NCBI RefSeq assembly: GCF_006345805.1
Contig: NC_043010.1
Span: forward strand, 35,154,001 to 35,218,000
Direction of reading: 5' to 3'
Source: Octopus sinensis
Lineage: Eukaryota
DNA: 64,000 nucleotides
The notes beneath the pieces are model-generated. The model ran no database searches. It was not told the origin of the DNA and saw only the letters and a program-made list of their open reading frames with translations. The position numbers and the translations under genes were made by a program. Each line of letters opens with the position of its first letter. The first letter of the stretch is position 1. This document shows, in pieces, positions 14,935-62,635 of this stretch.

Positions 14935-15323
14935 ATAGGCGTAGGAGTGGCTGTGTGGTAAGTAGCTTGCTTACAAACCACATGGTTCCAGGTTCAATCC
15001 CACTGTGTGGCACCTTGGGCAAGTGTCTTCTACCATAGCCTCGGGCCGACCAAAGCCTTGTGAGTGGATTTGGTGGACGGGAACTGAAAGAAGCCCATCA
15101 TATATATGTATGTGCGTGTATATGTTTGTGTGTCTGTTTGTCCCCCCAACATCGCTTGACAACCGATGCTGGTGTGTTTATGTCCCCATAACTTAGCAGT
15201 TCGGCAAAAGAGACTGATGGAATAAGTACTAGGTATACAAAGAATAAGTTCTGAGGTCGATTTGCCCGACTAAAGGCAGTGCTCCAGCATGGCCACAGTC
15301 ACATGACTGAAACAAGTAAAAGA
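14935..15323 (+). mobile_element. tRNA-derived SINE family A, full length
   Basis: Head ggcgtaggagtggctgtgtggtaag (A box) and ggttcaatccc (B box), internal (TA)/(TG) tract, tail catggccacagtc...aagtaaaaga. Further copies or fragments at about 17819-18200(-), 21185-21340(-), 23315-23460(-), 23690-23840(-), 25050-25220(+), 36088-36443(+), 40405-40640(-), 45253-45576(-), 51620-51785(-), 51789-52219(+), 54845-55000(-) and 63728-63800(-). Confidence 0.9.
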
Positions 15324-17691: not shown

Positions 17692-18293
17692 CAGTAGTTC
17701 TCAACCCTTTTTTACCTATGAACCCATTTCGTTCCTATTTTACCCAAGGTTGGGAGACTCTCATATTCATTCAACATCTAAAAACTCCTGTTATATTTTT
17801 ATGATTAAATATTAAGAATTACTCTTTTACTTGTTTCAGTCATTTGACTGTGGCCATGCTGGAGCACTGCCTTTAGTTGAACAAATCAATCCCAGGACCT
17901 TCTTATTCATTGTAAGCCTAGTACTTATTCTGTTGGTCTCTTTGCTGAACTGCTAAATTACAGGGACGTAAACACACTAACACCAGTTATCAAGTGATGG
18001 TGGGAGGACGGATAGACACACAAACACACACACATTTATATGATGGGCTTCTTTCAGTTTCCATCTTCCAAGTTCACATCCACTAATAAGGCTTTGGTTG
18101 GCCTGGGGTTATAGTAGACAACACTTGCCCAAGGTGCCACACAGTGGGACTGAACCCGGAACCATGTGGTTGGGAAGCAAACTTCTTATTACACAGACAC
18201 TTGTATAAAAAAAAACTATTAAATAGTTTGTGCATTGTAGAAATATAAGTAGTTTATTACAAATATCATATGGACTCTGGTTGAGAACCACTG
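17692..18293. mobile_element. hAT (Charlie-like) MITE with nested SINE A
   Basis: TIRs cagtagttctcaacc / ggttgagaaccactg. Degenerate 8-bp TSD acttagag / actgaggg. Confidence 0.75.
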
Positions 18294-18761: not shown

Positions 18762-18866
18762 TTATTCTGCCAAAGACCTATAATTGGTATCTTTGACAAA
18801 TTTCGACAGATATGTACAGCTCAGTTCCATTTTAATATTCTTGTCAACAAAATAATCCAGGGCACC
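18762..18866 (-). CDS. NATD1: NATD1 coding exon 3 (last): GALDYFVDKNIKMELSCTYLSKFVKDTNYRSLAE*
   Basis: Strong acceptor (long T tract, tttcag|GGT), phase 0 matching the exon 2 donor. Aligns by eye with the human NATD1 C-terminus ([27 protein letters not shown]). Candidate AATAAA at 18655-18660. Confidence 0.9.
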   Translation of the reverse strand, partial: GALDYFVDKNIKMELSCTYLSKFVKDTNYRSLAE

Positions 18867-22066: not shown

Positions 22067-22606
22067 ATATATAAGAAAATAGTAAAGTGTGAAAAAACGA
22101 CAGAAGGCTTAAATGTTAAAAAATATATATATTTGTGTCAAAATGTCTGGAGAATATTGGAAAAATTTTTTTTCCCTTTCCTTAAAATGACATAATTTAA
22201 AAAATTTTTAAAGAAATTACCGGTTTCGCGTGTAGCTTTTCAAATTTCTTGTGACGTTATGTTTATATTGCATGGAATTATCGTTGTTTTTATTTCCAGG
22301 AGATTTCTAAATAAGGGGAGGTAGTGAGTGATTTTTTCCACCGGAAAAAATCACTCACTACCTCCCCTTATTTAGAAATCTCCTGGAAATAAAAACAACG
22401 ATAATTCCATGCAATATAAACATAACGTCACAAGAAATTTGAAAAGCTACACGCGAAACCGGTAATTTCTTTAAAAATTTTTTAAATTATGTCATTTTAA
22501 GGAAAGGGAAAAAAAATTTTTCCAATATTCTCCAGACATTTTGACACAAATATATATATTTTTTAACATTTAAGCCTTCTGTCGTTTTTTCACACTTTAC
22601 TATTTT

Positions 22607-22615
<9 letters not shown>
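22067..22615. repeat. Perfect palindrome: 273-bp arms, 3-nt spacer (acc, 22340-22342)
   Basis: Manual comparison found no mismatch or indel. Mirror positions sum to 44682 at both centre and ends. Confidence 0.95.
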
Positions 22616-23853: not shown

Positions 23854-23925
23854 CTCCCCGGCGGGGAATTGAACCCCGGTCTCCCGCGTGACAAGCTAGG
23901 ATACTTACCACTATACTACCAAGGA
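23854..23925 (-). tRNA. tRNA-Asp(GTC), probable pseudogene
   Basis: 72-nt sequence TCCTTGGTAGTATAGTGGTAAGTATCCTAGCTTGTCACGCGGGAGACCGGGGTTCAATTCCCCGCCGGGGAG with intact A/B boxes. The anticodon stem has an A.G mismatch. A TTTT run follows about 9 nt downstream. Confidence 0.85.
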
Positions 23926-27905: not shown

Positions 27906-28140
27906 GCCAAATCAGACAGGGGTCTGGTGCAGCTTCCCAGCTCTAGTTAAACTGTCCAACCCATGCTAGCATGGACAGATGATGATGATGATGATGATTA
28001 TGCTCTTATCCAAAGCAGGTCCTCCAGATCTCACAGCCCACAAAGCAGTGTCCTAAGGAGTAGGCAAAATAGACAACAACTTTGATGCATGCTGTTAGCT
28101 TACTGTTCTCCCAGACCCTCCTTGTCAAGCCTAACTAATA

Positions 28141-28557
28141 CTCTTTTACTCTTTTACTTATTTCAGTCATTTGACTGTGGCCATGCTGGAGCACTGCCTT
28201 TAGTCAAGCAAATCGATCCCAGGACTTATTCTTTGTAAGCCTAGTACTTATTCTATCGGTCTCTTTTGCCTAACCGCTAAGTTATGGGGACGTAAACACA
28301 CCAGCATCGGTTGTCAAGCGATGTTGGCGGAGACAAACACAGACACACAAACATATATATACACACATACATATATATATATACATATATACGACAGGCT
28401 TCTTTTCAGTTTCCGTCTACCAGATCCACTCACAAGACTTTGGTCGACCTGAGGCTATAATAGAAGACACTTGCCCAAGGTGCCACGCAGTGGGACTGAA
28501 CCCAGAACCTGTGGTTGGTAAGCAAGCTACTTACCAGACAGCCACTCCTACGCCTAT
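28141..28557 (-). mobile_element. tRNA-derived SINE family A, full length
   Basis: Complete reverse complement of the family A consensus. Confidence 0.9.
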
Positions 28558-34354: not shown

Positions 34355-34662
34355 ATGTGTGTGTGTGTTTGTGCGTGTGTGTGAGTGTGTGTGCGTGTGC
34401 ATGCATGCACGTTCTTGTCTCTCCTTTTCTTAATATTGTTCAATGGTTGTAAATGATTGTCCCAGTCATACAAGCAGTATCATTCATTTCCAATATCCCA
34501 AGAGAACATGTCTGGTTATGGAGAAATGTTACCTTGCTCAGAATCAGGTGAAGGTTGACAAACAGAAAGAGCTTCCAGCTTAGAAAGTTTGCCTCAATAA
34601 ACCCTGCCCAACCCATGCAATGACACAACAAACGAAAATTAATTCAAATGAAAACTAGTTCA

Positions 34663-34739
34663 AAACAAGCAATAAGTGAAAGAATACTTTAGCTATGACT
34701 TCAACGATCCCTTTTCCACGAAAGTGGTCTGGTACTTCA
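34663..34739 (-). pseudogene. NATD1: Tandem partial duplicate of NATD1 exon 2 (3' half plus donor site)
   Basis: 77 bp with 2 mismatches to 34835-34911, offset 172 bp. It retains AAA|gtattc. Confidence 0.9.
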
Positions 34740-34859
34740 TTGGCTCAAATTTATGTTAAAAGGATGACGACAATGATGGTGGTGGTGGTGGGAGGGTGAT
34801 GACAAAGATGACATAACAAACAAATATTAATTCTAAACAAGCAATAAGTGAAAGAATAC

Positions 34860-34984
34860 TTTAGCTATGACTTTAGCGATCCCTTTTCCACGAAAGTGGT
34901 CTGGTACTTCAGTATGATAGAGATCTACTTGGTTGTCTTTGATCCATTCATACTCAAGGATGGCCTGACTTGGTTCTTTGTGAT
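34860..34984 (-). CDS. NATD1: NATD1 coding exon 2: (N)[41 protein letters not shown]
   Basis: ttttcatcag|AT...AAA|gtattc, phase 1 in and phase 0 out. Signature VDLxHTEVPDxxRGxGIAK matches human NATD1 ([23 protein letters not shown]). Confidence 0.93.
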
Positions 34985-35199
34985 CTGATGAAAAGAAACA
35001 AAAATCAATGGAATAAAAATGGAATGCAACTGGTTATTTAGGTAATGGGGTAAAAAAGGATAAATGATAAGGAAAGTAAGTTGATCCCTGACATGAAAAT
35101 GAAAACTGAAAAATGAAAATGAAAACTGTAAAATGAAAATGGAAATTGAAAAATAAAATTAAGAATTAAAGAGAAAAGGAAAAATATTTTTTAAAATAT

Positions 35200-35365
35200 T
35201 CAAATGAAACAACAGAAAAATTATAAGAAAAATATTAAAATGAAACAATGGAAAAATTATATGAAACAATGGAAAAATTATAAGAAAAATATTAAAATGA
35301 AACAATGGAAAAATTATATGAAACAATGGAAAAATTATAAGAAAAATATTAAAATGAAACAAGGG
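35200..35365. repeat. AT-rich minisatellite with alternating 21- and 36-bp units
   Basis: atgaaacaatggaaaaattat alone or followed by aagaaaaatattaaa, repeated. Confidence 0.85.
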
Positions 35366-37539
35366 AAAAATTATAGCAAAAACTTGAATAATTATTTTAG
35401 AATTTTTTTTTTAATTTAAAGAAATGTTGACAAATAAAAAAGGAAATGGAAAATCAAAACCAAACCCTTATTGTAATAGAGCTAAACTAAGTATATCGTT
35501 GTATGTAACTAAAACACTGCCAGCTCTCCCTCTCAATCTATCACACAAGCCCTAAGTAACACATGCATTACATGGCTTCTCACACAAACTTGTCTTCTCT
35601 CTGAAGGACTGAGACAGACAGACACAGTGACAGAGGGGAAAATGAAAAACAAAGAGAATTGCTTTCTAGCAGGTGAAAATATCTTCTGGTCTACTGGGTG
35701 TATAACTGTCTGGCTATATTTTTCTTGATATAAAGGTGATATCAATATATGTCAGTTGGTCCTAGTCCTCAACATAGGAGTTTCTGCATGGTCAAAAAAC
35801 ATGCTGGAAATAACAGTCAATTCTCTTTCAAATCATGTCCCACTGTCTTCAATAACAGATGTATTGAGCAATGTAGTCCCTGATATACAAAAGATGGGAT
35901 GGTCACAAAAGGATTATTTCTTATAGGTATATTTGATCGAGGAAATTCTGGAGGTAAAACAGCGAACAAACAAGTTTACTTCTGGCCAATGAAGAATGGT
36001 CTCTGCACAATCACTCAACCTATTAAAAATTGCAGACAAATTTCCTTCAAATCACCAAGTGCATATTGGACAATATATAGCCCTACATAGGTGTGGCTGT
36101 GTGGTAAGAAGCTTGCTTCTAACCACATGGTTTTAGGTTCAGTCTCACTGCATGGCACCTTGGTCAAGTGTCTTCTACTATTGCTTCAGGTTGTGAGTGC
36201 ATTTGGTAGATGGAAACTGAAAGAAACTCATCGTATGTGCGTGTGTGTGTGTTTGTATCCCACCATCACTTGATAACTGGTGATGGTGTGCTTACAGCCC
36301 TGTAACTTAGTGGTTCAGCAAAAGAAACTGATTGAATGAGTACCAGGTTTGGAAAAATAAGTACTGATGTTGATTCATTTGACTAAATTTTTTCAAGGTG
36401 GTGCCCCAGCATGGCCACAGTCTAATGACTGAAACAAGTAAAACAATACACACACAAACTGTTTTATGGAGATAATATTTCATCACTGAATTAAAAATAA
36501 TAAGAGAGGTCATGTCAATACTGATTAAAGTCAACAGGGGTAGTGTTGCCTCCATCGCCTCCAAATAAATCACATGAGACAGTCTATTCTAAACTCCATT
36601 TGAGCCTACCATTGGCTATAAAAACTCACCTCCTCCTCGTCTCAGAGTCTGTTGGTTCCAGACCTTCTAAGGTCGAACCACTGACCACATTACAGTGACC
36701 TCCATCTTCATCGCCACCATCATGTCTCTCACCAAGGTCATCAACATCTCTACACAGCACCAACAACACTGCACTGGTTCTAACATATCGCAATTTGTGA
36801 GCTTTCCTCACCAGGGTTAACAGAAAACATACAACTGATGCAGATGCATGTAGATATATGGATAAGTGTCCACCAACCACTTCCATTTATCATTCAGCTT
36901 GTGGCTGGCATTAAAGACATTTAAAGTTACCACCTTGTTCCATGTATTTCTTTATACCGTGTTCCTGTCAAACAATATTATAGCCTTCTGAGTAAAGTCA
37001 CATTAGATGGAATACAACCTATCTTTCTAAATAGCATTTGGTGATAGTGGAAGGGAATGTGAAAGTAAAAATAGAAAGCTAATGAAGAAAATTAGAAGTG
37101 CTGAAGTCAGACCACAATATGCTAAGCCTTGTAAAAGTGGCAAGCTGGCAGAAATGTTATCACACCAGACAAAATATTTAGCAGCCTTTCTTCTGGCTTT
37201 ACATTCTGAGGTCAGATGTTGGCAAGATTGACTTTGCTTTTCATCCATTTGGAGTCAATGAGATAAGTACTAGTTCAATGTAATTGACTAGCCACTCCCC
37301 TCAAAATTACAGGCTTTGTGCCAAGAGTAGAAAGAATATGGTAAGCCTTGCAGAAGAGGTGACAAAAAGATTTGAGATGAATGGTTACAAGTTGTGCAGC
37401 ATATTCATCAAACAGACATGGGTGTCTCTACATGGCTGCTCAACTTGCTAGAAATAGAAGTCAGATTTCCTTCAGCTCACACCCTACTGTCTTAAAAAGG
37501 TAAGGACATGTTAGAGAATATAGTCCTACATACTTAAAG

Positions 37540-37970
37540 TGAAGGAAAGTTATGGAAGAGGGAGACCCAGAAAGACATGGGACAAAGTACTGAAGACCAA
37601 TCTCAAAACACTGAGCCTTACAAAGGAGATGACAGAAAACTGGGATATGTGGTGCATTGTTGTATACAACAAGACCCACCCACCACAGCAGAATATCCTA
37701 AAACTAAGATGTCATGTAAAAATCATTGGTGTGGGTGCTGGTATCATATAAAAAGCACTGGTGCTGGTGTCACATAAACAGCACTGGTGCTGGTGTCATG
37801 TAGGAAGCGCACTCTGTAAAGTGGTTGGTGTTAGGAAGGGTATCCAGCTGTAGAAACCAAGGCAAAACAGACAATAGAACCTGGTGCAGCCTCTGGTTTT
37901 GCCAGTTCCTGTCAAGCCATCCAGCATAGAAAACAAGTGTTAAATGATGTTGATGATGATGATGATGACA
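37540..37970 (+). mobile_element. RTE LINE 3' fragment (ORF2 end plus 3' UTR with (GAT)n tail)
   Basis: GRGRPRKTWDKV coding end, then a UTR matching 58840-59010. Other 3' fragments at about 20060-20265(+), 25440-25650(-), 27905-27998(+), 30360-30533(-), 44310-44490(-) and 51960-52025(+). Confidence 0.8.
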
Positions 37971-38184
37971 CTGCAAAAAGGTTGAGAATGTCACAGCTGA
38001 AATGTAGATGTAGAGGCACCTTCATCTATTTTGCCATGCTTGTTATGGAGGTTGTTATTCACAGCAGCAACTTTCATAGCAAGCATTAATTTATTCTTAA
38101 GCATCATGTTGACCTGATCAAATAGAACTATGATCAAAGATGTTCTATCCTGTGGGGTGGCAGTCACAGATAGCATATCTAGGT

Positions 38185-39047
38185 TAGTGATTCTCAACCA
38201 TTTTTTATTTATGAACCCCTTTGATAACTATTTTACTCTGGTGGACCCCATTACAGATACTTCTTTCAAAATCCCTATTTTGTTTCTCCCACATTCACTT
38301 TTGTAGGTTTATGACAACACTCTCTGACAGAACATGTTTCAGTGGCCAAAAACATAACTACGGAGATGTACTTGCATAGCAAGTGACCTGATCTGAGATC
38401 GTGTGCTGGAACGAAAACAATTGCAGCGGGGAAGGTGTTTATAAGCCATTTGAGAAACACACAAAAACCGTTAGATTCACTTCAACATTTAAATTTAATT
38501 TATCAAAATATTTTCGTCGCTTTCAGACCTCGACAAAATTCTGACAAAATTCTGTTTCTTGTAATAAATACATCTAAGGCAATTTTTTTCACGGACCCTT
38601 AAAATACTGCTGTAGATCCCCAATTTACCATTTTGCTTATATGGAGGTAATTATTCTGGAGGTAAAACAGCAAACAAGTTTACTTCTGGCCAATGAACAA
38701 TGGTCTCTGCACAGTCACTCAACCTATTAAAAATTGCAGACAAATTTCCTTCAAATCACCAAGTGCCCTTTTAAATTAGTAAAGATCATATTGGACAATA
38801 TATAGTTTTCATTTTCATGTCAGGGATCAACTTACTTTCCTTATCATTTATCCTTTTTTACCCCATTACCTAAATAACCAGTTGCGTTCCATTTTTATTC
38901 CATTGATTTTTGTTTCTTTTCATCAGATCACAAAGAACCAAGTCAGGCCATCCTTGAGTATGAATGGATCAAAGACAACCAAGTAGATCTCTATCATACT
39001 GAAGTACCTGGAGGAGGGGTCATATAAACCCTTGTTGGGAACCACTG
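38185..39047. mobile_element. hAT MITE carrying later insertions
   Basis: Ends tagtgattctcaacc / gttgggaaccactg. Interrupted by another repeat (about 38355-38525) and by locally templated sequence (38653-39008). Confidence 0.7.
38804..39008 (+). pseudogene. NATD1: Inverted copy of NATD1 intron-1 3' end (123 nt) plus first 82 nt of exon 2
   Basis: Reverse complement of 34903-35107: 205 bp, one mismatch seen, no indel. Confidence 0.95.
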
Positions 39048-39522: not shown

Positions 39523-39768
39523 GGTACTACTTAAGAAGAGTGGTCCCGGTGCGCGCACTCGCATGCTCGAGCTAGCTAGTCGTGACTAATCGATCCTTTG
39601 CGTTTTATTTACTGTTTTAAAAAAAAATTATTTACTTTATGTAAAAAAATTATTTATTTTGCGTTTTATTTACTTTGCTAGGTAGTCGTTGTAGGATCGA
39701 CTAGTCACGACTAGCTGGCGCGGATGCGCGAGTGCGCGCACTCGGGACCACTCTTCTTAAGTAGTACC
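39523..39768. mobile_element. MITE with about 75-bp TIRs and 9-bp TSD (Mutator/MULE-type)
   Basis: TIR ggtactacttaagaagagtggtcccg.... Exact TSD ataaactcc at 39514-39522 and 39769-39777. Confidence 0.9.
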
Positions 39769-40050: not shown

Positions 40051-40198
40051 TTGGAGGTTGTGGCGGTAAATCTATTATAAATTTATTCATATTAGGTTTA
40101 TGGACAACGGTAAAATCGTCAGGTAAAGCTGCGGCCATAGTCTTCGCTCTGGAAGCTAAAAGTCGTGTAACCATTCGGGGTCCAGTTAGCAAAGACAT
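40051..40198 (-). CDS. NATD1: NATD1 coding exon 1 (in-frame ATGs at 40198, 40174, 40138)
   Basis: MSLLTGPR-MVTRLLASRAKT-MAAALPDDFTVVHKPNMNKFIIDLPPQPP, followed by consensus donor CCAA|gtaagt in phase 1, matching exon 2. FTVVH...KFII corresponds to the human IRVEH...QFTV strands. Confidence 0.85.
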
Positions 40199-40722
40199 TG
40201 TTGAGAATAAATGAACGTTTGTTTACGTTTCAGAGACAGATGCATTTGTCGGTAGACACGTGAAACAGAGACAAGTATATTACAAGGATACTCAGCTGAA
40301 CAGCACACCAATCCGACATTGCCCACGTCTCTCTCTCTCTCTTTCTCAGTCCTTCAGAAAGAAGATGGGCGGTGTAAGAACCAATATAATGCGTCCTTTT
40401 TTTTTACTTTTTTCCTTATTTTACTTGTTTCAGTCATTAGACTGCGGTCATACTGGGGCACCGCCTTGAAGACTTTTTAGTTGAATGTATTGACCCCAGT
40501 ATTTGTTTTAAAGCCTGGTACTTATTTTACCGATCTTTTTTGTCGAACCGCTAAGTTATGGTGGCGTAAACACACTAGCACTCGTTGTCAAGTGGTGATG
40601 GTGGGGAGGGACAAACACAGACGCAAAGACACGCCCACGCACACACAGCTATATGTGTGTGTATGTGTGTGTATGTGTGTGTGTGTGTGTGTGTGGTGTG
40701 TGTGTGTGTGTGTGTGTGTGTG

Positions 40723-41158: not shown

Positions 41159-41276
41159 ATCACAAAGAACCAAGTCAGACCATTCTTGAGTATGAATGGA
41201 TTGAAAATAACCAAGTAGATCTTTATCACACTGAAGTACTAGACCATTTTCATGGAAAAGGAATTGCCAAAGTCAT
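41159..41276 (+). pseudogene. NATD1: Older inverted copy of NATD1 exon 2, upstream of exon 1
   Basis: [39 protein letters not shown]; 14 substitutions in 118 nt. The acceptor AG is absent and the donor is replaced by a (CAT)n tract. Confidence 0.9.
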
Positions 41277-45244: not shown

Positions 45245-46809
45245 ACTAATATATTCTTTGTAAGCCTAGTACTTATTCTATCGGTCTCTTTTGCCAAACC
45301 GCTAAGTTATGGGGACGTAAACACACCAGCATCGGTTGTCAAGCGATGTTGGTGGGGACAACACAGACAAACATACACACACACACACACACATATATAT
45401 ATTCATATATACGACGGGCTTCTTTCAGTTTCCGTCTACCAAATCCACTCACAAGGCTTTGGTCGGCCTGAGGCTATAGTAGAAGATACTTGCCCAAGGT
45501 GTCACGCAGTGGGACTGAACCTGGAACCATGTGGTACGTAAGCAAGCTACTTACCACACAGCCACTCCTATGCCTATTATGTAACGTTTATTTCACAATG
45601 TACAGCTGCTTCTCTGGAGGACTTGTTATTAATAAGAACTCATTTATCCACTGTTCCTTGATTTAACACTTACAATAATTTTATGGGGTTTTGGGGGGGT
45701 TTTCTTTTTACTTAATGTGTTTTACACTGTGTAGGACAAAATAAAACCAGGATTCATAAAAAAAAATAGAAACCTGCAAGAGTTCACAAAGAATGAACAA
45801 AGTACAACTCTGTAGCAAAGACATATCAACTGTAAACTGACATGCAAAAATGTTGCAATGGACCGGCACTGTCAGACACTTCAGGATCAAAATAGAACCA
45901 AGTCTATTGAACAGTCTGTACAACACACTATTTCTCATCAACCAATGCACAACGTTTGGTACATGCACCTTATACTTGCCATCCATGATGGAGGTATTCT
46001 CCTTGATTACTTTCAAGTTGTTGCACTTGACAAGACATGGATAATGTTTTCTTAGAAGTAAGCTGTATAAAACATGGCTTGTCATCAGGTAGGCCACGTT
46101 ACTAAAAACATTCAAGGTAATTTTTGTTTGGTGTGCTATTCAGGAAGTCCCACAATCTATAGGTTGCTCATGACCAAATTAAATGCATACTTCTCAAAAC
46201 AAACACAACAATAAAGTGTTTCTTCAGTAACATTTTTTAATTCAAGGTTTCAGATTTCCCCCTAAGCAGTGTTTACATTGTTTGACATTCTTTTGTTATG
46301 AACAACTCTCTCTTGGCTTGACCAACACCTGCACAACACCTTATTTTATTTTGGTGACCAAGTTAGTACACGCCAGCACAATTTGTCCTCGTTAGTCAAA
46401 AGACACCTGCTGTTCTTTTTGTTTGTATTTCTAATCATGTAACATTTTCTCTTTTTTTTTTGTCTGTTTTGTTGCACATATTCACTTGCTTTATTCCAAA
46501 AATTGAATGCCCTTAGCTTAGATTTTTGGGGCCTACCAATTTTGAACAGCCTCAGGTGTAACAGGCCAAAACTGTAATGATGATTGGAAGCTTGACTGAT
46601 GAAAGAAAGCCACAAATGTTTCGTCCTGGTTTTTCCTGTCCATCTTTGTATCGTCTATCTGTCCATATGTGTTTATTGTTGTCTGTTATATTCTTATTCT
46701 CTTTTTTTTATTTATATATATATTGGTGCCCCAGCATGGCTGCGGCCTTCGGGCTAAAACATTTTTAAGGATTTATATGTATATGTGTGTATGTGTATAT
46801 ATATATATT

Positions 46810-50404: not shown

Positions 50405-50498
50405 GCCCGCATAGCTCAGTCAGTAGAGCATCAGACTTTTATGACTGAATCTTCACAGAGTCATCTGAGGGTCGTGGGTTCAAGTCCCCCTGCAGGTG
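50405..50498 (+). tRNA. tRNA-Lys(TTT) with a 21-nt intron at position 37/38 (50442-50462), probable pseudogene
   Basis: GCCCGCATAGCTCAGTCAGTAGAGCATCAGACTTTTA[tgactgaatcttcacagagtc]ATCTGAGGGTCGTGGGTTCAAGTCCCCCTGCAGGTG. The D-loop GG is changed to AG, and there are mismatches in the acceptor and T stems. Confidence 0.85.
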
Positions 50499-50854: not shown

Positions 50855-51032
50855 ATAGGTGTAGGAGTGGCTGTGTGGTAAGTAGCTTGCTTACAAACCT
50901 CATGGTTCCGGGTTCAGTCCCACTATGTGGCACCTTGGGCAAGTATCTTCTACTATAGCCTCGGGCTGACCAAAGCCTTGTGAGTGGATTTGGTAGATGG
51001 AAACTGAAAGAAGCCCATCGTATATATGTATA

Positions 51033-51075
<43 letters not shown>

Positions 51076-52903: not shown

Positions 52904-54232
52904 TGTATAATAAAAAAAAGCACAAACAATTTTCAAAGAAATATTGTTTTTTTTGTAAAAAATAAAAAAAGAAAAAGAAAAAAAAAAAGAAGTGGGTGAT
53001 GATAATTTATATTGGTTGATGGCAAAAATGGGTAACCAGTAGCACTCAGGTTACATACAGTCCTTTATAGCTTTTAGTAAGACATATATAAATATCAAGA
53101 TTATATAAACATAACTGTTTACTAAAATTTCATAGCATATTCCGTTGGTCTAATAAAGTAAATTTGAACAATTTTGTTTCTTTCTCTCTCACTCACACTT
53201 TCTCTCTATTAAGATTTTAGAATTTGCTTAGGGTAATATATAGTGATCCCTGTATTACAGACAAGGTTTATTCAATTAATACTTTAACCCTTTTGATACC
53301 AACCTGCTTGAAACTGCCTCTGACTCTGTAGTAGAAATGTCTTGTTTTCAAAAGTTCTGAATTAAAATCTTCCACCAAAGCTTAGTCGCAATTTATGTTC
53401 CTAACACTAGTTTAGTGATAAGTTATTTTACTAAATTCTTTGTCATATTTAAAATTAATTGTAAAAAAACACAGAGCATCTCAACAGAAATATGGTAACA
53501 AAAGGGTGAATGGTGTAGCTCAATATATGATGAGCAACATCTCAGAAGGCTTGCTGCTAAAATAAAGGTTGCTGATGCTTGATCTTCGAACTGAGGCAGA
53601 GTAAAGACAGTAAGACAGGTAAAGCAGATGGTATAAAACAGAGGTAGTAAGAAGTCAACAAGTTCAATTGAACAAAGACTGTTGTAGTGACTGTAAAAGA
53701 CACAAATCAAATGTGAGCAAATGGCTGAAAGATATTAATATAGGAAGACTTTCTTATCATGTGATGACAGTCATTTTTTTTATGGATGTCAATTTGTCTT
53801 CAAAATAAATGTGTGTGTGTGTGTGTGTGCATATGTGGAGTGAATAGTAACATAATCTTAAACCTATGAAAGATACTCCAGTATATAGGGATCAGTACAT
53901 GTTCGGGTTTTAAATAAGATTTTTTGCCTCTCATAAACAAACATTAGCAAGATGATATGTGTCAGATAACCATGAAAGATCATACAAAACATTGTAAAAC
54001 CAAAGTGTCTGTTTCTGCAGTGTTCATCCATCATCATGAACTCATCCTTACTCACTATCTGATCATCACCAAAGGTTGTAAGACAAATGGTAGCAATTGT
54101 AGAGGACATAGTATGGCCCTTGCTGGATATTGCATTTATTATTAAGAAGATAATAGCATTGTCTGTTCCTGTTAACTGACTCTGTGGTTAGTATGTCCAG
54201 CTCTTTGAACCTTCCCTGCAGTCACCAGTCCA

Positions 54233-54537
54233 TCAATTCAGTAACTCCAATTCAGATATATTTCTTTCTTGGAAAATAATATCAAGTGCCTTCTCCATTG
54301 GTTCATTGGTCCCGGCAAGATTTCTGACAACTTTCTTTGCCCATACAAAATACTGTTGGACCCTTTCTTCAGTCCAGCCAACTGGTGTACTTCGGTTCAA
54401 ATCACGAAGGTTGTATAGTTTGTCTGCCAGTTTCACCAACTTTGCACGGTGGCTGCTATTCTTTGCATGTTCGATTTGCAGTTTCTTACGCTCTGCCTTG
54501 GCTAGACTTTTGTCGTCTGTTACTTCAGCAACAATTC
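54233..54537 (-). CDS. HDDC3: HDDC3/MESH1 last coding exon
   Basis: ttgacag|GA ATT...; IVAEVTDDKSLAKAERKKLQIEHAKNSSHRAKLVKLADKLYNLRDLNRSTPVGWTEERVQQYF... matches human MESH1 (EVTDDK...AKLVKLADKLYNLRDLNR). Confidence 0.95.
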
Positions 54538-55034
54538 CTGTCAACAAAAGAGAGAAAATAGACAGTGAGAGATAGATAAAGGTATTATAAGGTATACAAG
54601 CACCTTCAGGGACTTGTGGTCAAGAATTTGCAATGACATGGTTTTGAATTTGGATTCACCGCATGGCACATTGGGCATGTTATGACACATTACTACTAGA
54701 TTGAATTTGGTAAAGGAAAACTCTGCAAAACATTGCCATATGGATGTATGCTAGAATTGCATATTTGTGTGTTTGTGTATGTTTTGTGTGTGTATGTGTC
54801 TGTATCTGTGATCATGTTGGTATTTTTGCTTACCTCCCTTACTGCTGTTTATATCCCATAGTTTATCAGTTGGACAAATAGAGATCAATAATATAATTAC
54901 AAGACTTGAAAACAAGGACTGGTGTAAATATGATTGACTAAATATTTTTAAAAGCAGTGTCCCAGGATGGTTGCACTCCAGTGACTGAAAGCAATAAAAG
55001 TGTAAAGAATAACACACACACACACATACGTATG

Positions 55035-55195
55035 CATGCATGCATGCATGCATGTATGTATGTATGTATGTATGTATGTATGTATGTATGTATGTATGTA
55101 TGTATGTATGTATGTATGTATGTATGTATGTATGTATGTATGTATGTATGTATGTATGTATGTATGTGTGTGTATATATATATATATATATATAC
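55035..55195. repeat. (TGCA)n/(TATG)n/(TA)n compound microsatellite
   Basis: Directly visible; representative of many such tracts in the window. Confidence 0.95.
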
Positions 55196-56059
55196 ATAAA
55201 TAAGTGGAGGCACATGGCCTAGTGGTTAGAGCAGCGGACTCGTGGTCAAGGGATTGTGGGTTCGTATCTCAGACCGGGCAATGTGTGTGTTTATGAGCAA
55301 AACACCTAAGCTCTACGCAGTTCTGCTGACTCTTTCCTCCTGCATCTTGCAGCTCACCTGCAATGGACTGGCGTCCTGTTCAGGTGGGGAACATATACGC
55401 CAGTCTATTGTAGACACTGTGAATTTGAGCTTAAGATCATACTGGTTTCATGAGCCTACACTGCCACACTGGCTCAACATGACTTGGCAGAGGATGCAGT
55501 TTTTATACTCATATCCAGGAGTAGTTAAGTTGATTCCATCAACCACAATACACAACTGTTACTTGTTTTAATCACCTTGAAAGGATGAAAAGCAAAGTCA
55601 GCCTCAGCAGTATTTGGACTCAAAATGTAGACAGATGAAATACTGCTGAGCATTTTGACTAAGGTGCTAATGATTCTACCAGCTTACCTATGCATATATA
55701 TGTGTATGTGTGTGTGTGTGTGAATGCGCATGTCTCAGTGGTTAGAGCATCAAGCTTACGATCATGAGGTTGTTAGCTTGAATCCCAGACCGGGCTGCGT
55801 ATTGTGTTCTTGAGCAAGACACTTTATTTCACATTGCTCCTGTTCACTCAGGTGTTGAAATGAGTCGCAACGTTGCAGGTGCCAAGCTGTATCGGCCTTT
55901 GCCTTTCCCTTGGATAACACTGGTGGCATGGAGAGGAGAGGTCGGTATGCATTGGCGACTGCTGGTCTTCCATAAAAACAACCTTGCCCGGACTTATGCC
56001 TAGGAGGGTAACTTTCTAGGTGCAATCCCATAGTCAGTCATGACTGAAGGGGGTCTCAG

Positions 56060-56111
<52 letters not shown>

Positions 56112-56582
56112 TTATGAGAGGTAATGGTGTCAAGAAGACCCTAAGGTGTCAGGTAATGCTGAGTCAGTGCTAGCGACAGACTATAGTTAAGCTCCAGTTT
56201 CGGTGATTATGCAAATGAGGTGTCCAACATAGGTCATATATCAGCATGTGTATATATAAAAAAATTAACAGAATGAGATAAAAATCCACGGCTGTGAAAG
56301 ATTTCAGAACAATTATAAATTAGAAGCTGTTTCTGGGATATTTTATATATCCCTTCATCTCACATCCATTTTCACTTCACTCTCTATTTCATATCTTATC
56401 TAGAATAACTATTGCTTAACCAATTTCTCACACCATCTCCGATGAAGGGATATATAAAATATCCCGGAAACAGCTGTAAAACCTATTTATAAATGTTCTG
56501 AAATCTTTTACAGCTTTGGATTTTTAACTCATTCTTGTTAATTTATATATATATATAAGAATATGTCTATATATATATATAG

Positions 56583-59012
56583 GTTGCTGAATAAAGAAAA
56601 TGAATGGGATAAAGAGAGTCTGCCGAATGTTGACCCAACAGAGGGACCAGCTATCCGAGTTGATAGTTCCGTGGTAGCTAAGGCAATTAGAAGCATGAAG
56701 ACAGGGAAAGCCCCAGGCCCATCAGGAATTACTGCAGAGATGCTCAAAATATCTGGCAGTGTCGGCTATAACCTAGTCACCCGTATAGTCAACCAGGTGA
56801 TACACGAAGGAGTCATACCCAATGACTGGTGTAGCAGCATACTAGTCAACTGCTACAAAGGTAAAGGTGATGCCCTGGATACAAATAATTACAGAGGTAT
56901 CAAGCTGTTGGATCAGGTAATGAAGGTTATGGAGAGGGTCATAGCCCAACTAATTAGAGAGAGAGAGTTAGTTTAGATGAGATGCAGTTTGGGTTCGTGC
57001 CAGGGAAAAGCACCACTGATGCTATATTCCTGGTAAGGCAGCTGCAGGAGAAATACCTAGCCAAAGATAAGCCCCTGTACCTGGCTTTCGTTGACATGGA
57101 GAAAGCCTTTGATAGGGTCCCCCGATCCCTCATCTGGTGGTCAATGAGGAAACTAGGGATAGATGAATGGCTGGTGAGGGCTGTGCAAGCCATGTACAGA
57201 GATGCCGTAAGTAAGGTTAGGGTTGGCAACATGTACACAGAAGAATTCAAAGTAGAGGTTGGGGTCCACTAGGGTTCAGTACTCAGCCCCCTCCTATTTA
57301 TCATAGTCCTCCAGGCAATTGTGGAGGAATTCAAGACAGGCTGCCCCTGGGAGCTCCTCTATGCTGACGACCTCGCTCTAATTGCTGAGTCACTATCAGA
57401 ACTGGAGCAGAAGTTCCAGGTGTGGAAGGAGGGTTTAGAATCGAGGGGCCTTAGAGTCAACCTAGCTAAAACCAAAGTACTAATAAGTAGAAAGGTAGAC
57501 AATCCACAAATATCCTCAGGAAGATGGCCCTGCTCGATCTGTAGAAAAGGTGTAGGTAGAAACTCTATAAGATGTACCCAGTGTAAGCTATGGACACATA
57601 AGAGGTGCAGCAATGTCAAAGGTAGGCTAACTGGGAAGATAGTTTTTGTATGTGGCAGATGCTCGGGAGCATTGACCTCCGAAAATCTGCAGAAAACAAC
57701 TTCCGTCACTTTCCGGGGGGAAAAACTAGAAGTAGTTGATAGCTTCCGCTATCTAGGTGACCAAGTCAGTAGTGGGGGTGGGTGCGCTGAAAGTGTAACT
57801 GCTAGAATAAGAATAGCCTGGGCAAAGTTTAGGGAGCTCTTACCTCTGCTGGTGACTAAAGGCCTCTCGCTCAGAGTAAAAGGCAGACTGTATGATGCAT
57901 GTGTACGAACAGCTATGCTACATGGCAGTGAAACATGGGCCGTGACTGCTGAGGACATGCGTAAGCTCGTGAGGAATGAAGCCAGTATGCTCCGATGGAT
58001 GTGTAATGTCAGTGTACTTACTCGACAGAGCGTTAGTACCTTGAGAGAAATGTTGTACCTAAGAAGCATCAGTTGTGGTGTGCAAGAGAGACGATTGCGC
58101 TGGTATGGTCATGTGGCGAGAATGGATGAAGATAGGTGTGTGAGAAAGTGCCAATCCCTAGCAGTTGAGGGAACCCGTGGAAGAGGTAGACCCAGGAAAA
58201 CCTGGGACGAGGTGGTGAAGCACGACCTTCGGACATTAGGTCTCACCATGGAAATGACTAGAGACCGAGACCTATGGAAGTATGCTGTGCGTGAGAAGAC
58301 CCGGCAAGACTAGTGAAGCCATATCCCGTGGCCCCTACCTGGGACGTAGTCAGTCCACCTGTGCATACCTTCCTTATTGTGACACTTGAGAAGATCTGTT
58401 GAGGCAAGTGAAAATCAAAATCAAAATCAAAATCAAAACCAAATCAAAATAGATGTACATCAATGGAATTTGTATCCTATTTGTATCCTTTATGGTACCA
58501 GTGCCGGTGGCACATAAGAAAGCCATCTGAACGTGACCGTAGCCAGTACCGCATCGACTGGCCTCCGTGCTGAAGGCACGTAACAAACACCATCCGAGCA
58601 TGGCTGTTCGCCAGCCTCGTCTGGCACCTGTGCCGGTGACACATAAGAAAACACCATCCGAGCGTGGCCGTCTGCCAGCCTCGTCTGGCACCTGTGTCGG
58701 TGGCACATAAAAAACACCATCCGAGCGTGGCCGTCTGCCAGCCTCGTCTGGCACCTGTGTCGGTGGCACATAAAAAATACCATCCGAGCGTGGCCGTCTG
58801 CCAGCCTCGTCTGGCACCTGTGTCGGTGGCACATAAAATCACCCACTACACTCTCGGAGTGGTTGGCATTAGGAAGGGCATCCAGCTGTAGAAACACTGC
58901 CAGATCTGACTGGCCTGGTGCAGCCTTCGGGCTTGCCAGACCCCAGTTGAACCGTCCAACCCATGCTAGCATGGAAAGCGGACGTTAAACGATGATGATG
59001 ATGATGATGATG
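56583..59012 (+). mobile_element. Young 5'-truncated RTE-clade LINE with PHD-like finger, about 700-bp 3' UTR and (GAT)n tail
   Basis: RT motifs KAPGPSGI, NYRGIKLL, QFGF, FVDMEKAFDRV, GVH*GSVLSPLLF, LLYADD, FRYLG. One frameshift in a (GA)n run near 56960 and one nonsense codon at 57270-57272. Flanking direct repeat aag(a/g)atatgtctatat acts as TSD. Confidence 0.93.
58500..58835. repeat. 63-bp tandem array (about 4-5 units) inside the RTE 3' UTR
   Basis: (a)caccatccgag recurs at 58587, 58651, 58714 and 58777. Confidence 0.9.
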
Positions 59013-60132
59013 AAGGATATGTCTATATGTGTATATATATATATATAGTGTTGGGAACTGCTCAAGCATTGAACCTGATACCTTAGGTATAAATATTTTT
59101 CAAATTAAAGATAAGAAATCAGAGAAATTCAACAATTCAAAAACATTTCAATACAAACCAAGCCAAAAGGAGTAATTATAATATATTTAATGCATCTCTC
59201 ATTAAAAAGTTCAATATCAAAACAGCACTAAAAATATTCAATATCGAAACAATACTAAAAATTTCAAAATTACAGACACACCAAAAATATTAAAGATATA
59301 ATAGACATTATATGTTCAACAAATTATGCAAATCTATGAAAATAAATCAACAATGGTGACAAGCTGGTATTTTATAAATAATGTAGAAATAATTTACAGA
59401 AACATGTCATTGCACAGAGAACACTGACATATTTTTCACATATCTTTCTGCATGTATCTGTGTCTGGTGAGCAATAATATTTCTGTGCATATATGTGTGA
59501 TGTGTATGTACATAAGCTTGTGTCATTGTATGTGTGTATAAGGTTTGTCTATGTGAATGCTTATGTGTAAAGATGTGTATGTGTGTATAAGTATCTATAT
59601 GTTTGTGTTTGCATGTGTATGGTGTATGAGTATGCTTGTATGTATGTTAACGTTTGTATGTACCAGTGTGTATATAATATAAACGTGATATAAGGTGGTG
59701 AGCTGACAGAAACATTAGCATGTTAGGTGCCAGGTGAAATGCTTAGCAGTATTTTGTCTGTCTTCACGTTCTGAGTTCAAATTCTGCCATGGTCAACTTT
59801 GCCTTTCATCCTTTTGAGGTCGATAAATTAAGTACCAGTTGCATGCTGGGGGCCATCTAATCGATGACCACCACCCCACCCCCCACCCCCGCTCCCAAAA
59901 AATTTCAGGCCTTATACCTAGAAAAGAATATAAATGTGATATGAATATATTAATTAGGTACAGGCCTGGTGGTGTGGTCAAGATGTTTACTTTATAGCCA
60001 AGGGGCTCTTGGCTTGATCCTACTGTACAGCACCCTGGGCAAGTGTCACCTGCTTTAGCCTTAGTCTGAGCAATATTTTCTGAGTGGAATTTGGTATATG
60101 GGAGCTGTGCAGAAGTTCATTAGATATAACAT

Positions 60133-61472
60133 ATATGGCTGACCCAGAAAGACATGGGATGAAGTGGTAAGGACTGATCTCAGGAGGTTGGACCTCACTG
60201 AGGAAATGACTATGGACTGAGATGTCTGGCAGTATGATATTCTTGAGAAAACCCACCCATATCAGCGAAACTGAGTTCTAGAAGTACTGTGTGTCCTGCC
60301 CACACTCTACCACAACGAACCAAACTACGTCTCTACATCTCTTCTCTTCCTCACATTTCTGCTTCCTGTACTACGATTACCTACCACTCTCCAATTTTGT
60401 CCTCTTGATCTGGTGCCATTGTATGATTGCTTTCTGCTTGCTCCCGACCTGTGCGTTCTACCCAGATGCCTTGTCTCACTCTATTATTGCCATCTGCTAG
60501 CCCCCAACTTGAGTGTTCCATCCATACATAACAAGAAAACTTTTCCCATACCCCACCTCAACAAACCAATCTACATCTCCTTTTTCTCACATTTCCCCCT
60601 TCATTCACTATGTTCTGCTGTATCATTGCTATCTGGTACCCCTCCAACTCTAGATATACCCAGGTCTTTCGCCACTTACTTGCACTCTCTTTGCAATACC
60701 CTGTCACTTATATTATGGCATTTGAACCTTAAGGGTATATCCTGGCACTTATCACTATCTATATCTTTCTCTTCCTTTACTCAACCATCTCATTTATACT
60801 CTGATCCCCGTTTCTTGTGAGTATGCCTGGCATTTTGCTACCATCTCCCACTATCTCTCACTCTTTCTCCTGCACTTCCTTAAGGTTGGGCAACCATGTA
60901 TTTTCTTTGTGGCAGCACACCTGTCTCTGTATTCATTCCTGATCTTTCTCTCTCCAGCTGGGTAATCTTGTACTTCCTCTACAGCAAGACACCTGTACCT
61001 GTCTCACTATAACCTTTTCATCATCACCTCCTCCAATGCCTGCCTCTCCTCTTAAAAGTTTTTGTCTTGCAAGTACTTGGTGACCCTGTTAGTGCAGGTG
61101 CCACATAAAAACACCCAGTCCACACTGTAAAGTGGTTGGTATTCAGAAGGATATTCAGCTGTAAAAACCTTGCCAAAACTGATCTTGCCTGTGCTTGTGC
61201 CACGTAAAATGCACTACTCATCCCACCTGTGCTTGTGCCATGTAAAAACACTACTCACCTCACCTGTGCTTGTGCCACATAAAAAGCACTAAGTCCACTC
61301 TATTGAGTGGTTGGTATTAGGAAAGGCGTCCAGCTGTAAAAATCCTGCCAAAACAGTCACAGAAGTCTGGTGCAGGCTTCGGCCTGGCCAGCTCTTGTGG
61401 TACTATTCCACACATGCTGGCATCGAACATGGACGTTAAATGGTGATGATGATAATGATGATGATGATGATA
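60133..61472 (+). mobile_element. RTE LINE 3' fragment with long pyrimidine-rich UTR
   Basis: RPRKTWDEVVRTDL coding end. The UTR ends atggacgttaaatggtgatgatgat. Confidence 0.7.
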
Positions 61473-61611
61473 TCATTGGGCTGTTCGATGAAGACAAGCA
61501 GGCTGAAACTTCAAACTCACTGTCACTCTTGTTAAATCATTTATATATATATCTACCCATAATAACAAGCAATAGTGTGTGTATGTGTGTGTGTGTGTGC
61601 GTGTGCATGTG

Positions 61612-62460: not shown

Positions 62461-62635
62461 GGTTCTAATATAAACACTATTAGACAGCATAAGAAACAAT
62501 GTTTGACAGAAAAGAGGTACAGGCCTTTTGATGGGAATTGCCAAAGAGTCAGTTTTAGCAAGAGTAATGTTAATCTCTTCCAACAGGTAATCAAGTAATA
62601 CCAACACATGTGGTAAACTGAGTATAGAACTTTAC

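What the first reader, a model, noticed from the sequence alone, without database searches (positions are those of the whole stretch)
34903..39008. NATD1 intron 1 carries a near-perfect antisense copy of the exon 2 splice acceptor
Seen: 38804-39008 is the reverse complement of 34903-35107 (205 bp, one mismatch). It covers the branch region, polypyrimidine tract, AG and two thirds of exon 2, and both copies lie in the same pre-mRNA about 3.7 kb apart. Inference: they could pair into a long duplex that masks the acceptor (exon skipping) or acts as an editing-complementary sequence. Established: coleoid cephalopods have extensive ADAR A-to-I recoding that depends on such duplexes. Skipping the 125-nt exon would shift the frame.
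Basis: partly seen in the sequence, partly recalled or inferred. Interest (0 to 1): 0.75.

Follow-up and report, generated by a model that had tools for sequence, protein, structure and literature searches.

The report
Young inverted exon copy in octopus NATD1
In two closely related octopus species, a 354-base insert in the first intron of the NATD1 gene carries a backwards copy of the next exon's start and splice site, so the unspliced RNA can fold into a 205-base-pair double strand; this is real and testable, but no effect on editing or splicing has been shown.

Summary
Window 38804-39008 is the reverse complement of 34903-35107 (205 nt, 1 mismatch, BLAST E 1e-103). The window is Octopus sinensis chromosome CM016872.1/NC_043010.1.

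NATD1 lies on the minus strand. The source arm is the last 123 nt of intron 1 plus the first 82 of 125 nt of exon 2. The copy sits in intron 1, 3,696 nt upstream.

It is not an assembly error. The independent O. vulgaris assembly has the same insert, the same junctions and the same mismatch. O. bimaculoides has a clean empty site.

The insert is composite, about 354 nt. It joins the inverted exon-2 piece to a direct copy of another intron-1 piece. There are short microhomologies at the junctions, and no terminal inverted repeats or poly(A). Its most likely origin is microhomology-mediated template switching.

The two arms are predicted to pair (-362 kcal/mol; 204 of 205 cognate pairs in the minimum-energy fold of the whole intron). 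That would make a strong ADAR substrate and would bury the acceptor.

No RNA data could be reached, so editing and exon skipping remain untested. Sequence divergence fits neutrality, and the annotated proteins include exon 2. Verdict: a real, young structural variant and a good natural experiment, with no demonstrated regulatory role.

The parts
38804..39008 (+). Inverted copy (arm 1). It reads as the intron-1 end plus exon-2 sense on the + strand, so it is antisense within the minus-strand NATD1 pre-mRNA. It lies in intron 1.
   Evidence: 204/205 identical to the reverse complement of 34903-35107; translation [28 protein letters not shown], then diverges
34903..35107 (-). Source arm (arm 2): the last 123 nt of intron 1 (polypyrimidine tract, AG) plus the first 82 nt of exon 2.
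   Evidence: orthologous sequence is present in O. bimaculoides
34860..34984 (-). NATD1 exon 2, 125 nt, acceptor ttttcatcag|AT, donor AAA|gtattc.
40051..40198 (-). NATD1 exon 1, coding part (ATG at 40198; donor CAA|gtaagt).
18762..18866 (-). NATD1 exon 3, coding part including the stop codon.
   Evidence: stop coordinate matches NC_043010.1:35172762-64
38653..39006 (.). The whole lineage-specific composite insert, about 354 nt. It is absent from the orthologous site in O. bimaculoides (L001 about 11368-11398).
38653..38805 (-). Module 2 of the insert: a direct-orientation copy of another intron-1 segment, abutting arm 1 through a shared CT.
   Evidence: D3; 2 mismatches plus a 4-nt indel against its source in O. 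vulgaris
35945..36080 (-). Source of module 2. It is the 5' part of a 690-bp segment (35400-36089) that is itself absent from O. bimaculoides. O. sinensis has since lost 21 nt here.
38656..38662 (+). Heptamer CTGGAGG at one end of the insert. It also occurs in the module-2 source.
39008..39014 (+). The same heptamer CTGGAGG at the other end. This is microhomology, or an ambiguous 7-bp target duplication.
35093..35159 (.). 20-nt tandem repeat (ATGAAAATGAAAACTGAAAA) in which the distal breakpoint of the copied arm (35107) falls. A 57-nt minisatellite follows at 35204-35375.
34645..34739 (-). Older partial tandem copy of the 3' third of exon 2 plus the donor and the start of intron 2. Its start corresponds to 34911, within 9 nt of the arm end at 34903.
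   Evidence: (D4); present in O. vulgaris, absent in O. bimaculoides
41159..41276 (+). Old inverted copy of exon 2 (88% identity, no stop codons), about 1 kb upstream of the start codon. It is shared with O. bimaculoides in truncated form.

Best explanation
The feature is a real, young structural variant of the Octopus vulgaris / O. sinensis lineage. About 354 nt were inserted into NATD1 intron 1. The insert was stitched from two nearby pieces of the same gene: an inverted copy of the intron-1 end plus exon-2 nt 1-82, joined to a direct copy of an intron-1 segment about 1 kb upstream of exon 2.

Most likely origin (inferred): one replication or repair event with serial, microhomology-guided template switches of the FoSTeS/MMBIR or templated-insertion type. 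It probably began in the AT-rich tandem repeats next to exon 2.

Consequence (inferred from folding and from established ADAR and splicing biology, not shown): once exon 2 is transcribed, the two arms zip into a 205-bp almost perfect intramolecular dsRNA with a 3.7-kb loop. The duplex buries the branch region, polypyrimidine tract, AG and two thirds of exon 2.

In a coleoid nucleus this should be promiscuously A-to-I edited on both arms. The arms hold 59 A (sense) and 76 A (antisense). Of these, 32 lie in the exon, and 23 of those would recode if edited. The duplex should also delay or reduce exon-2 splicing in a fraction of transcripts. Skipping gives a frameshift and an early stop.

I judge it a neutral or mildly deleterious by-product that has not had time to decay, not an adapted regulatory element.
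For: Real and lineage-specific:
- The same insert, junction 27-mer and arm mismatch are in the independently made O. vulgaris assembly (ONT/Illumina/Omni-C against PacBio/Hi-C).
- O. bimaculoides has a clean empty site with collinear flanks and no gap there.
- Argonauta has no extra exon-2 copies.

Composite make-up and junctions:
- The modules and their sources are defined.
- Junction overlaps are GG, CT and CCTCCAG.
- There are no terminal inverted repeats and no poly(A). Intron sequence is retained, so it is not a processed retrocopy.
- The distal breakpoint lies in a tandem repeat.
- Both modules are about 99% identical to their sources, which fits one event.

Young and neutral-looking:
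- The arms differ at 1 of 205 positions in O. sinensis and 2 of 205 in O. vulgaris; the first difference is shared.
- The 2.8-kb loop differs between the two species by about 5 substitutions.

Pairing: -361.8 kcal/mol, and 204 of 205 cognate pairs in the global minimum-energy fold.

Coding consequences.

Precedents:
- An intragenic inverted duplication with junction microhomology caused exon skipping, attributed to a pre-mRNA hairpin (PMC6549551).
- Inverted intronic Alu pairs base-pair, are edited and shift a downstream exon from constitutive to alternative (PMC2533698).
- In O. vulgaris most editing lies in introns and UTRs where hairpins occur (PMC9699675).
Against: - No RNA evidence of pairing, editing or skipping was available.
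- Folding is thermodynamic and ignores co-transcriptional splicing, RNA-binding proteins and helicases. A 3.7-kb separation is long for an editing duplex.
- The annotated proteins in both species contain an unedited exon 2, so any masking is incomplete.
- Two of the three junction microhomologies are only 2 nt, which is weak evidence for a mechanism.
- The 7-nt repeat at the insert ends could instead be a target-site duplication.
- Exon 2 has been copied three separate times (41159-41276, 34645-34739 and this copy), and two copies share a breakpoint within 9 nt. A purely random origin does not explain this.
- Neutrality is inferred from very few substitutions.
Confidence: 0.6

Rival explanations
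1. A newly born functional element. The inverted copy serves as an editing-complementary sequence that gives the O. vulgaris complex species-specific recoding of NATD1. Alternatively it acts as a regulated switch that lowers NATD1 output through exon-2 skipping and nonsense-mediated decay.
For: - A stable duplex covers the coding sequence and the acceptor.
- 23 of the 32 exonic A positions would recode if edited.
- The copy has been retained in two species since before their split about 2.5 Mya.
- An inverted copy of the same exon has arisen twice, and the older one keeps an open frame in O. sinensis.
Against: - The two species are about 99.8% identical in neutral intron sequence, so retention carries no information.
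- O. bimaculoides lacks the copy and has truncated the older one.
- Perfect long duplexes give promiscuous rather than selective editing (established ADAR biochemistry).
- There is no covariation to examine.
Confidence: 0.1
2. Silent passenger. The arms never meet in vivo, because intron 1 is coated, folded locally or processed too quickly. The insert then has no effect on editing or splicing.
For: - The arms are 3.7 kb apart and each can form local structure (-36 and -28 kcal/mol).
- Normal exon-2-containing proteins are annotated in both species.
- In O. vulgaris, editing was reported to alter splice sites only very rarely (PMC9699675).
Against: - The energy gain from pairing is about 300 kcal/mol.
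- Inverted Alu pairs at kilobase distances do pair and are edited (PMC2533698).
- Intron 1 cannot be spliced before the acceptor arm is transcribed, so both arms coexist in the RNA.
Confidence: 0.2
3. RNA-templated origin by twin priming. A reverse transcriptase copied a fragment of unspliced NATD1 pre-mRNA into a staggered nick. This gave an inverted upstream piece and a direct downstream piece flanked by a 7-bp target duplication.
For: Read on the + strand, the insert is [antisense of pre-mRNA 36080..35945][sense pre-mRNA 35107..34903]. That is the twin-priming order. It is flanked by CTGGAGG on both sides, and the internal priming site carries the complementary heptamer.
Against: - There is no poly(A) and no LINE tail.
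- About 840 nt of template are skipped between the two pieces.
- The left heptamer is fully explained as part of the copied source.
- The O. bimaculoides empty site (CCAGG|GAT) fits a break without duplication at least as well.
Confidence: 0.15
4. Assembly artefact, or a transposable element that captured an exon fragment.
For: - The O. sinensis assembly is PacBio-based and does contain one suspicious perfect palindrome elsewhere in this gene (22067-22615).
- The insert is flanked by a 7-nt direct repeat.
Against: - An identical insert and identical junctions are in the independent O. vulgaris assembly.
- There are no terminal inverted repeats, no poly(A) and no further copies in the window or in the four loci examined.
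- Both modules derive from within 4 kb of the insertion site.
Confidence: 0.04

Closest known systems
Intragenic inverted duplications made by microhomology-mediated template switching, for example the MANBA inverted duplication that causes exon skipping (PMC6549551)
   Same: A piece of a gene is duplicated and inserted in inverted orientation within the same gene. The junctions carry microhomology. A long pre-mRNA hairpin is predicted, and in MANBA it was blamed for the exon skipping.
   Different: - This one is 354 nt rather than 13 kb.
- It is composite, with two templates, one inverted and one direct.
- It is present in both reference genomes of two wild species rather than being a disease allele.
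- Its splicing effect is unknown.
Inverted intronic Alu pairs in primates (PMC2533698; PMC13019027)
   Same: Two inverted repeats a few kb apart in one pre-mRNA form dsRNA. That dsRNA is A-to-I edited and can change splicing of a neighbouring exon.
   Different: - The arms here are not transposable elements.
- One arm is the exon and its acceptor, so editing would hit coding sequence and the splice signals directly.
- The duplex is almost perfect, whereas Alu pairs are typically 10-20% mismatched.
Editing-site complementary sequences (ECS) of ADAR targets such as the GRIA2 Q/R site (established knowledge; the term is used in the reviews found)
   Same: An intronic sequence complementary to an exon lies in the same transcript and must act before splicing.
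   Different: - Classical ECS duplexes are short and imperfect, are conserved, and direct editing of specific adenosines.
- This one is 205 bp, perfect and about as young as the species pair.
- It lies upstream rather than in the downstream intron that holds the GRIA2 ECS.
- No editing has been observed.
Splice-site sequestration by engineered hairpins (Solnick 1985, as cited in PMC6549551)
   Same: A splice site is buried in a stem formed with a complementary sequence placed in the intron.
   Different: The present case is natural, its loop is 3.7 kb, and no outcome has been measured.
L1 twin-priming inversions (established knowledge; Ostertag and Kazazian 2001, recalled, not checked here)
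   Same: The insert has an inverted upstream segment followed by a direct downstream segment of one template, with short direct repeats at its ends.
   Different: There is no LINE sequence and no poly(A). About 840 nt of template are skipped, and the direct repeat is explained equally well as microhomology.

Membership tests
ADAR editing-site complementary sequence (ECS) | Sequence complementary to the exon around the edited site | tested here: met
   204 of 205 complementary positions, covering exon 2 nt 1-82
ADAR editing-site complementary sequence (ECS) | Located in the same pre-mRNA as its target | tested here: met
   The copy lies between the exon 1 donor (40050) and the exon 2 acceptor (34985) on the transcribed strand
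ADAR editing-site complementary sequence (ECS) | A-to-I editing of the paired exon observed in RNA | not testable with these tools
   No reads were available and no entry was found in the supplements searched. One published pipeline kept only uniquely mapping reads, which would tend to hide identical arms.
ADAR editing-site complementary sequence (ECS) | Pairing conserved or covarying across species | tested here: not met
   Absent in O. bimaculoides and Argonauta. O. sinensis and O. vulgaris are too similar (about 99.8%) to inform.
Microhomology-mediated template-switch duplication (FoSTeS/MMBIR, templated insertion) | Inserted sequence copied from nearby loci in cis, possibly several and in either orientation | tested here: met
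   Both modules originate 2.6-4 kb from the insertion site in the same intron/exon; one is inverted and one direct
Microhomology-mediated template-switch duplication (FoSTeS/MMBIR, templated insertion) | Microhomology at each junction | tested here: inconclusive
   Overlaps are GG, CT and CCTCCAG. The 2-nt overlaps are expected by chance fairly often.
Microhomology-mediated template-switch duplication (FoSTeS/MMBIR, templated insertion) | No transposon hallmarks | tested here: met
   No terminal inverted repeats, no poly(A) and no other copies in the window or loci. The 7-nt terminal repeat is explained by the source sequence.
Transposable element or processed retrocopy | Terminal repeats or poly(A), loss of introns, multiple genomic copies | tested here: not met
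   The insert contains 123 nt of intron. It has no terminal inverted repeats and no poly(A), and there is a single copy in about 160 kb examined. The whole genome was not searchable.
L1-type twin-priming insertion | Inverted 5' piece plus direct 3' piece of one RNA, target-site duplication, poly(A) | tested here: inconclusive
   The topology fits and a 7-nt direct repeat is present, but there is no poly(A) or LINE tail and the repeat is ambiguous
Splice-site-masking pre-mRNA hairpin | The splice site lies inside a stable stem | tested here: met
   The AG, the polypyrimidine tract and 123 nt of intron are paired in the minimum-energy fold of the full intron. This is a prediction only.
Splice-site-masking pre-mRNA hairpin | Altered splicing that depends on the stem | not testable with these tools
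   No junction counts were available. The annotated proteins include exon 2.
Assembly artefact | Absent from independent assemblies or reads | tested here: not met
   Present with identical junctions in O. vulgaris GCA_951406725.2, which was made with different technology from a different animal

The most novel reading that the evidence does not exclude
This is a snapshot of how an editing-complementary sequence is born. One template-switch event placed a perfect antisense copy of an exon and its acceptor into the upstream intron, between the O. bimaculoides split and the O. vulgaris / O. sinensis split. As a result, NATD1 mRNA in the O. vulgaris complex, but not in O. bimaculoides, would carry dense A-to-I recoding confined to exon 2 nt 1-82, with or without a frame-shifting exon-2-skipped isoform. 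The duplex could later decay into a selective editing site.
Probability: 0.2. Interest if true: 0.7.

Novelty: new member of a known kind. Interest (0 to 1): 0.45.

Why it matters
Little is documented about how exon-complementary intronic sequences that guide ADAR first arise. Cephalopods are the animals in which recoding matters most.

This locus offers a dated, clean comparison. Two species carry a perfect 205-bp exon/acceptor duplex, and a close relative has the empty site. Public RNA-seq exists for both sides. If the arms are edited, the locus measures what a brand-new perfect duplex does to a coding exon and its splice site in vivo. If they are not, it sets a limit on long-range pairing in octopus pre-mRNA.

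It also flags a technical blind spot. Reads that lie wholly inside the two near-identical arms would map to both arms, so pipelines that keep only unique mappers would discard them.

Tried and rejected
- **One large inversion (34740-39008).** This was considered to explain the breakpoint shared by the inverted copy and the partial tandem copy. It is rejected because O. bimaculoides is collinear and in the same orientation across 38645-34803.
- **Processed retrocopy.** Rejected for the young copy, which carries 123 nt of intron. Also rejected for the old copy at 41159-41276, because the O. bimaculoides version extends into intron-like sequence.
- **Refreshing of an old inverted copy by gene conversion.** Rejected because the O. 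bimaculoides site is empty.
- **Transposon capture.** No terminal inverted repeats or poly(A), no open reading frame suggestive of a transposable element among ORFs of 90 aa or more (not searched against any library), and no further copies.
- **A true 7-bp target duplication.** This could not be established, because the module-2 source carries the same heptamer.
- **Searches for RNA evidence.** No paper mentions NATD1 together with octopus. The Cell 2017 cephalopod editing paper is not held. The supplements of three other papers hold no site-level data for this gene.
- **Look-up of the spliced window protein.** The cluster member P0005 was used instead.
- **O. vulgaris locus L003.** It never appeared in /data, so it was analysed only with get_sequence, the DNA search and DNA alignment.
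- **Rfam.** It found nothing in the region.
Full report
**Observation.** The inverted repeat is exactly as described. The arms are 34903-35107 and 38804-39008, 205 nt each and 3,696 nt apart. Identity is 99.5% with E 9.6e-104, and there is one mismatch. In the 64-kb window only one other inverted repeat reaches 80 nt at 95% identity or more, an unrelated palindrome at 22067-22615.

**Identity of the locus.**
- The exon-2 and exon-3 peptides hit Pfam PF14542. They also hit cephalopod NATD1 proteins.
- tblastn with the O. bimaculoides protein places exon 1 coding sequence at 40198-40051, exon 2 at 34984-34860 (125 nt) and exon 3 at 18866-18762. All are on the minus strand with GT/AG borders.
- The spliced product equals O. 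sinensis XP_029645125.1.
- The reverse complement of the O. sinensis locus L002 is identical to window 8762-50198. The window is therefore CM016872.1/NC_043010.1 35,154,001-35,218,000. A published stop-codon coordinate for LOC115219160 agrees.
- The source arm is intron 1 positions -123 to -1 plus exon 2 nt 1-82. The copy lies in intron 1 and is antisense in the pre-mRNA.
- Skipping exon 2 shifts the frame, with a stop after 8 codons.

**Is it real, and how old is it?**
- The O. vulgaris locus (L003, GCA_951406725.2) has the antisense copy, exon 2 and the partial tandem copy at matching spacing. It also has the exact left-junction 27-mer.
- That assembly was built from ONT, Illumina and Omni-C data from a different animal. 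The O. sinensis assembly is PacBio plus Hi-C.
- A five-way alignment shows that the single arm difference is shared by both species. The source arm and O. bimaculoides have A at intron position -41, and the copy has G (sense-equivalent). O. vulgaris has one further change in its copy.
- The insertion therefore predates the split of the two species, put at about 2.5 Mya in PMC10700109.
- O. bimaculoides (L001) is collinear through intron 1. Window 39026 to 38645 collapses there to about 30 nt of readable sequence, with no assembly gap at that point.
- Argonauta hians has only the three exons.
- Across 2.8 kb of the loop, O. sinensis and O. vulgaris differ by about five substitutions and three indels. 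One or two differences in 205 nt, and retention in both species, are what neutrality predicts. Nothing can be said about selection.

**Anatomy of the insert.**
- In gene orientation the insert reads: left flank ...GACCCCTCCTCCAG(G); then the antisense arm (39008 to 38804); then, through a shared CT, a direct copy of intron-1 sequence 36080 to 35945 (38805 to 38653) that ends ...TTTTACCTCCAGAAT; then right flank AATTACCTCCATATAAGC.
- Homology with the second source stops abruptly after CCTCCAGAAT.
- In O. vulgaris the second module matches its source with 2 mismatches and one 4-nt indel. O. sinensis has since deleted 21 nt from the source. Both modules are therefore the same age, which fits a single event.
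- The second source lies in a 690-bp segment (35400-36089) that O. bimaculoides also lacks.
- Junction overlaps are GG, CT and the heptamer CCTCCAG. The heptamer occurs at both ends of the insert but is also part of the second source, so it cannot be shown to be a target-site duplication.
- There are no terminal inverted repeats and no poly(A). No further copy occurs in the window or in the four loci held.
- The distal breakpoint of the copied arm (35107) falls in the first unit of a 20-nt tandem repeat, and a 57-nt minisatellite follows.
- I conclude that the most likely origin is a replication or repair event with serial microhomology-guided template switches. This is the mechanism proposed for the MANBA intragenic inverted duplication.
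- An RNA-templated twin-priming event has the same topology and cannot be excluded. The absence of poly(A), the 840-nt skip and the ambiguous duplication make it less likely.

**Predicted behaviour of the RNA.**
- Cofolding the arms gives -361.8 kcal/mol, against -36.4 and -27.9 kcal/mol for each arm alone.
- In the minimum-energy structure of the whole 5,190-nt intron 1 plus exon 2, 204 of 205 arm positions pair with their cognate partner.
- The stem contains the AG, the polypyrimidine tract and any branch point within 123 nt.
- The sense arm has 59 A and the antisense arm has 76 A. Of the 32 A in the paired part of exon 2, 23 would change the amino acid if read as G.
- From established ADAR biochemistry, long perfect duplexes are deaminated promiscuously, while selective editing needs imperfect helices. 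The expectation is therefore hyper-editing rather than a defined recoding site. Editing of the acceptor A would also destroy the AG.
- Precedents support an effect on splicing. Inverted intronic Alus pair, are edited and make a downstream exon alternative (PMC2533698). The MANBA inverted duplication causes exon skipping (PMC6549551).
- These steps are inference. No reads or site tables for this gene were reachable.
- One large O. vulgaris editing survey retained only uniquely mapping reads. That would tend to discard reads lying wholly inside the near-identical arms.
- The annotated proteins in both species include exon 2, so masking cannot be complete.

**Other copies of exon 2.**
- An older copy lies at 41159-41276 on the + strand. 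It is 88% identical, has no stop codons and lies about 1 kb upstream of the start codon. O. bimaculoides has a truncated version with intron-like sequence attached, so it is an old genomic inverted duplication that is not conserved intact.
- A partial tandem copy of the 3' third of exon 2 plus the donor lies at 34645-34739. It is about 92-95% identical, is present in O. vulgaris and is absent in O. bimaculoides.
- Its start corresponds to 34911, within 9 nt of the arm end at 34903. It is clearly more diverged than the inverted copy. I treat them as separate events and leave the shared breakpoint unexplained. A break-prone neighbourhood next to the AT-rich tandem repeats is my best guess.

**Comparison with known systems.** The feature works like an intronic inverted repeat or a splice-site-masking hairpin, and it could work like an ECS. 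It meets the sequence-level criteria of an ECS (complementarity, same pre-mRNA). It fails the conservation criterion, and the defining criterion of observed editing is untested. I therefore do not file it as an ECS. It fits the class of small intragenic inverted or templated duplications.

**Verdict.** The element is a young, probably neutral structural variant of the O. vulgaris complex. Its value is as a natural experiment with an empty-site relative. Interest 0.45; novelty: new member of a known kind.

Noticed in passing
window 22067-22615 (NATD1 intron 2): A near-perfect 549-bp palindrome with 273-nt arms and a 3-nt spacer, flanked by (TA)n. In O. vulgaris the flanks are only about 88 nt apart and the palindrome is absent. 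It is also absent from the O. bimaculoides and Argonauta loci. It is either an O. sinensis-specific foldback insertion or a long-read (missed-adapter) assembly artefact.
   Followed up: partly
window 39523-39768 (intron 1): A 246-bp insertion resembling a miniature inverted-repeat element. It has terminal inverted repeats of about 78 nt (GGTACTACTTAAGAAGAGTGGTCCCG...) and a 9-bp target duplication GGAGTTTAT. The site is empty in O. bimaculoides (L001 about 10428-10436). It contrasts usefully with the exon-copy insert, which has no such hallmarks.
   Followed up: partly
window 41159-41276 (+); L001 6339-6567: An older inverted copy of exon 2, 88% identical, open-frame in O. sinensis and lying upstream of the start codon. 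It is shared with O. bimaculoides, where it is truncated and joined to sequence orthologous to window 47398. If the transcription start lies further upstream, it would be a second, imperfect antisense partner for exon 2. The start site could not be determined.
   Followed up: partly
window 34645-34739: A partial tandem copy of the 3' third of exon 2 with an intact donor (AAA|gtattc). It sits near the start of a 5.6-kb stretch (34802-29217) absent from O. bimaculoides. Its start is within 9 nt of the inverted copy's breakpoint, and this coincidence is unexplained.
   Followed up: partly
window 35400-36089: A 690-bp segment with an A-rich 3' end, absent from O. bimaculoides and inserted right after a SINE-like repeat. 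Its 5' part is the source of the insert's second module. Its nature (transposable element or templated insertion) is unknown.
   Followed up: partly
window 39009/39008 and about 38836/38835 (gene orientation): The left flank plus the antisense arm create an acceptor-like CCCCTCCTCCAG|G and a donor-like AAA|GTAAGT 172 nt apart. This is a possible frame-shifting pseudo-exon. It was judged by eye only and not scored.
   Followed up: no
window 36088-36443 and many other places (e.g. 14942-15321, 17825-18200, 28139-28556, 45252-45572, 50856-51045): A SINE-like repeat family of about 350 nt with more than a dozen copies at 74-87% identity in both orientations. It gives several imperfect inverted pairs inside NATD1 introns (e.g. 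36385-36446 with 40416-40477).
   Followed up: no
window 23854-23925 (-) and 50405-50498 (+): Two tRNA-like hits from Rfam and ARAGORN. One is tRNA-Asp (GTC). The other is aberrant at 94 nt with an odd anticodon loop. They may be genuine tRNA genes or tRNA-derived repeats.
   Followed up: no
window about 53585-63184 (-); L001 1-4010: The upstream neighbour is an HD-domain gene (PF13328/PF01966, HDDC3/MESH1-like) in the same orientation as NATD1. In Argonauta the neighbour is on the opposite strand.
   Followed up: no
L003 (O. vulgaris) gene range 10001-34622; window exon 3: O. vulgaris has a second annotated NATD1 isoform ending ...NYRYAFI instead of ...NYRSLAE. This implies an internal donor in exon 3 and a further downstream exon. 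The 3' UTR carries a miRNA site (Ovu-Novel-30) conserved between octopus species, according to a supplement of PMC9699675.
   Followed up: no
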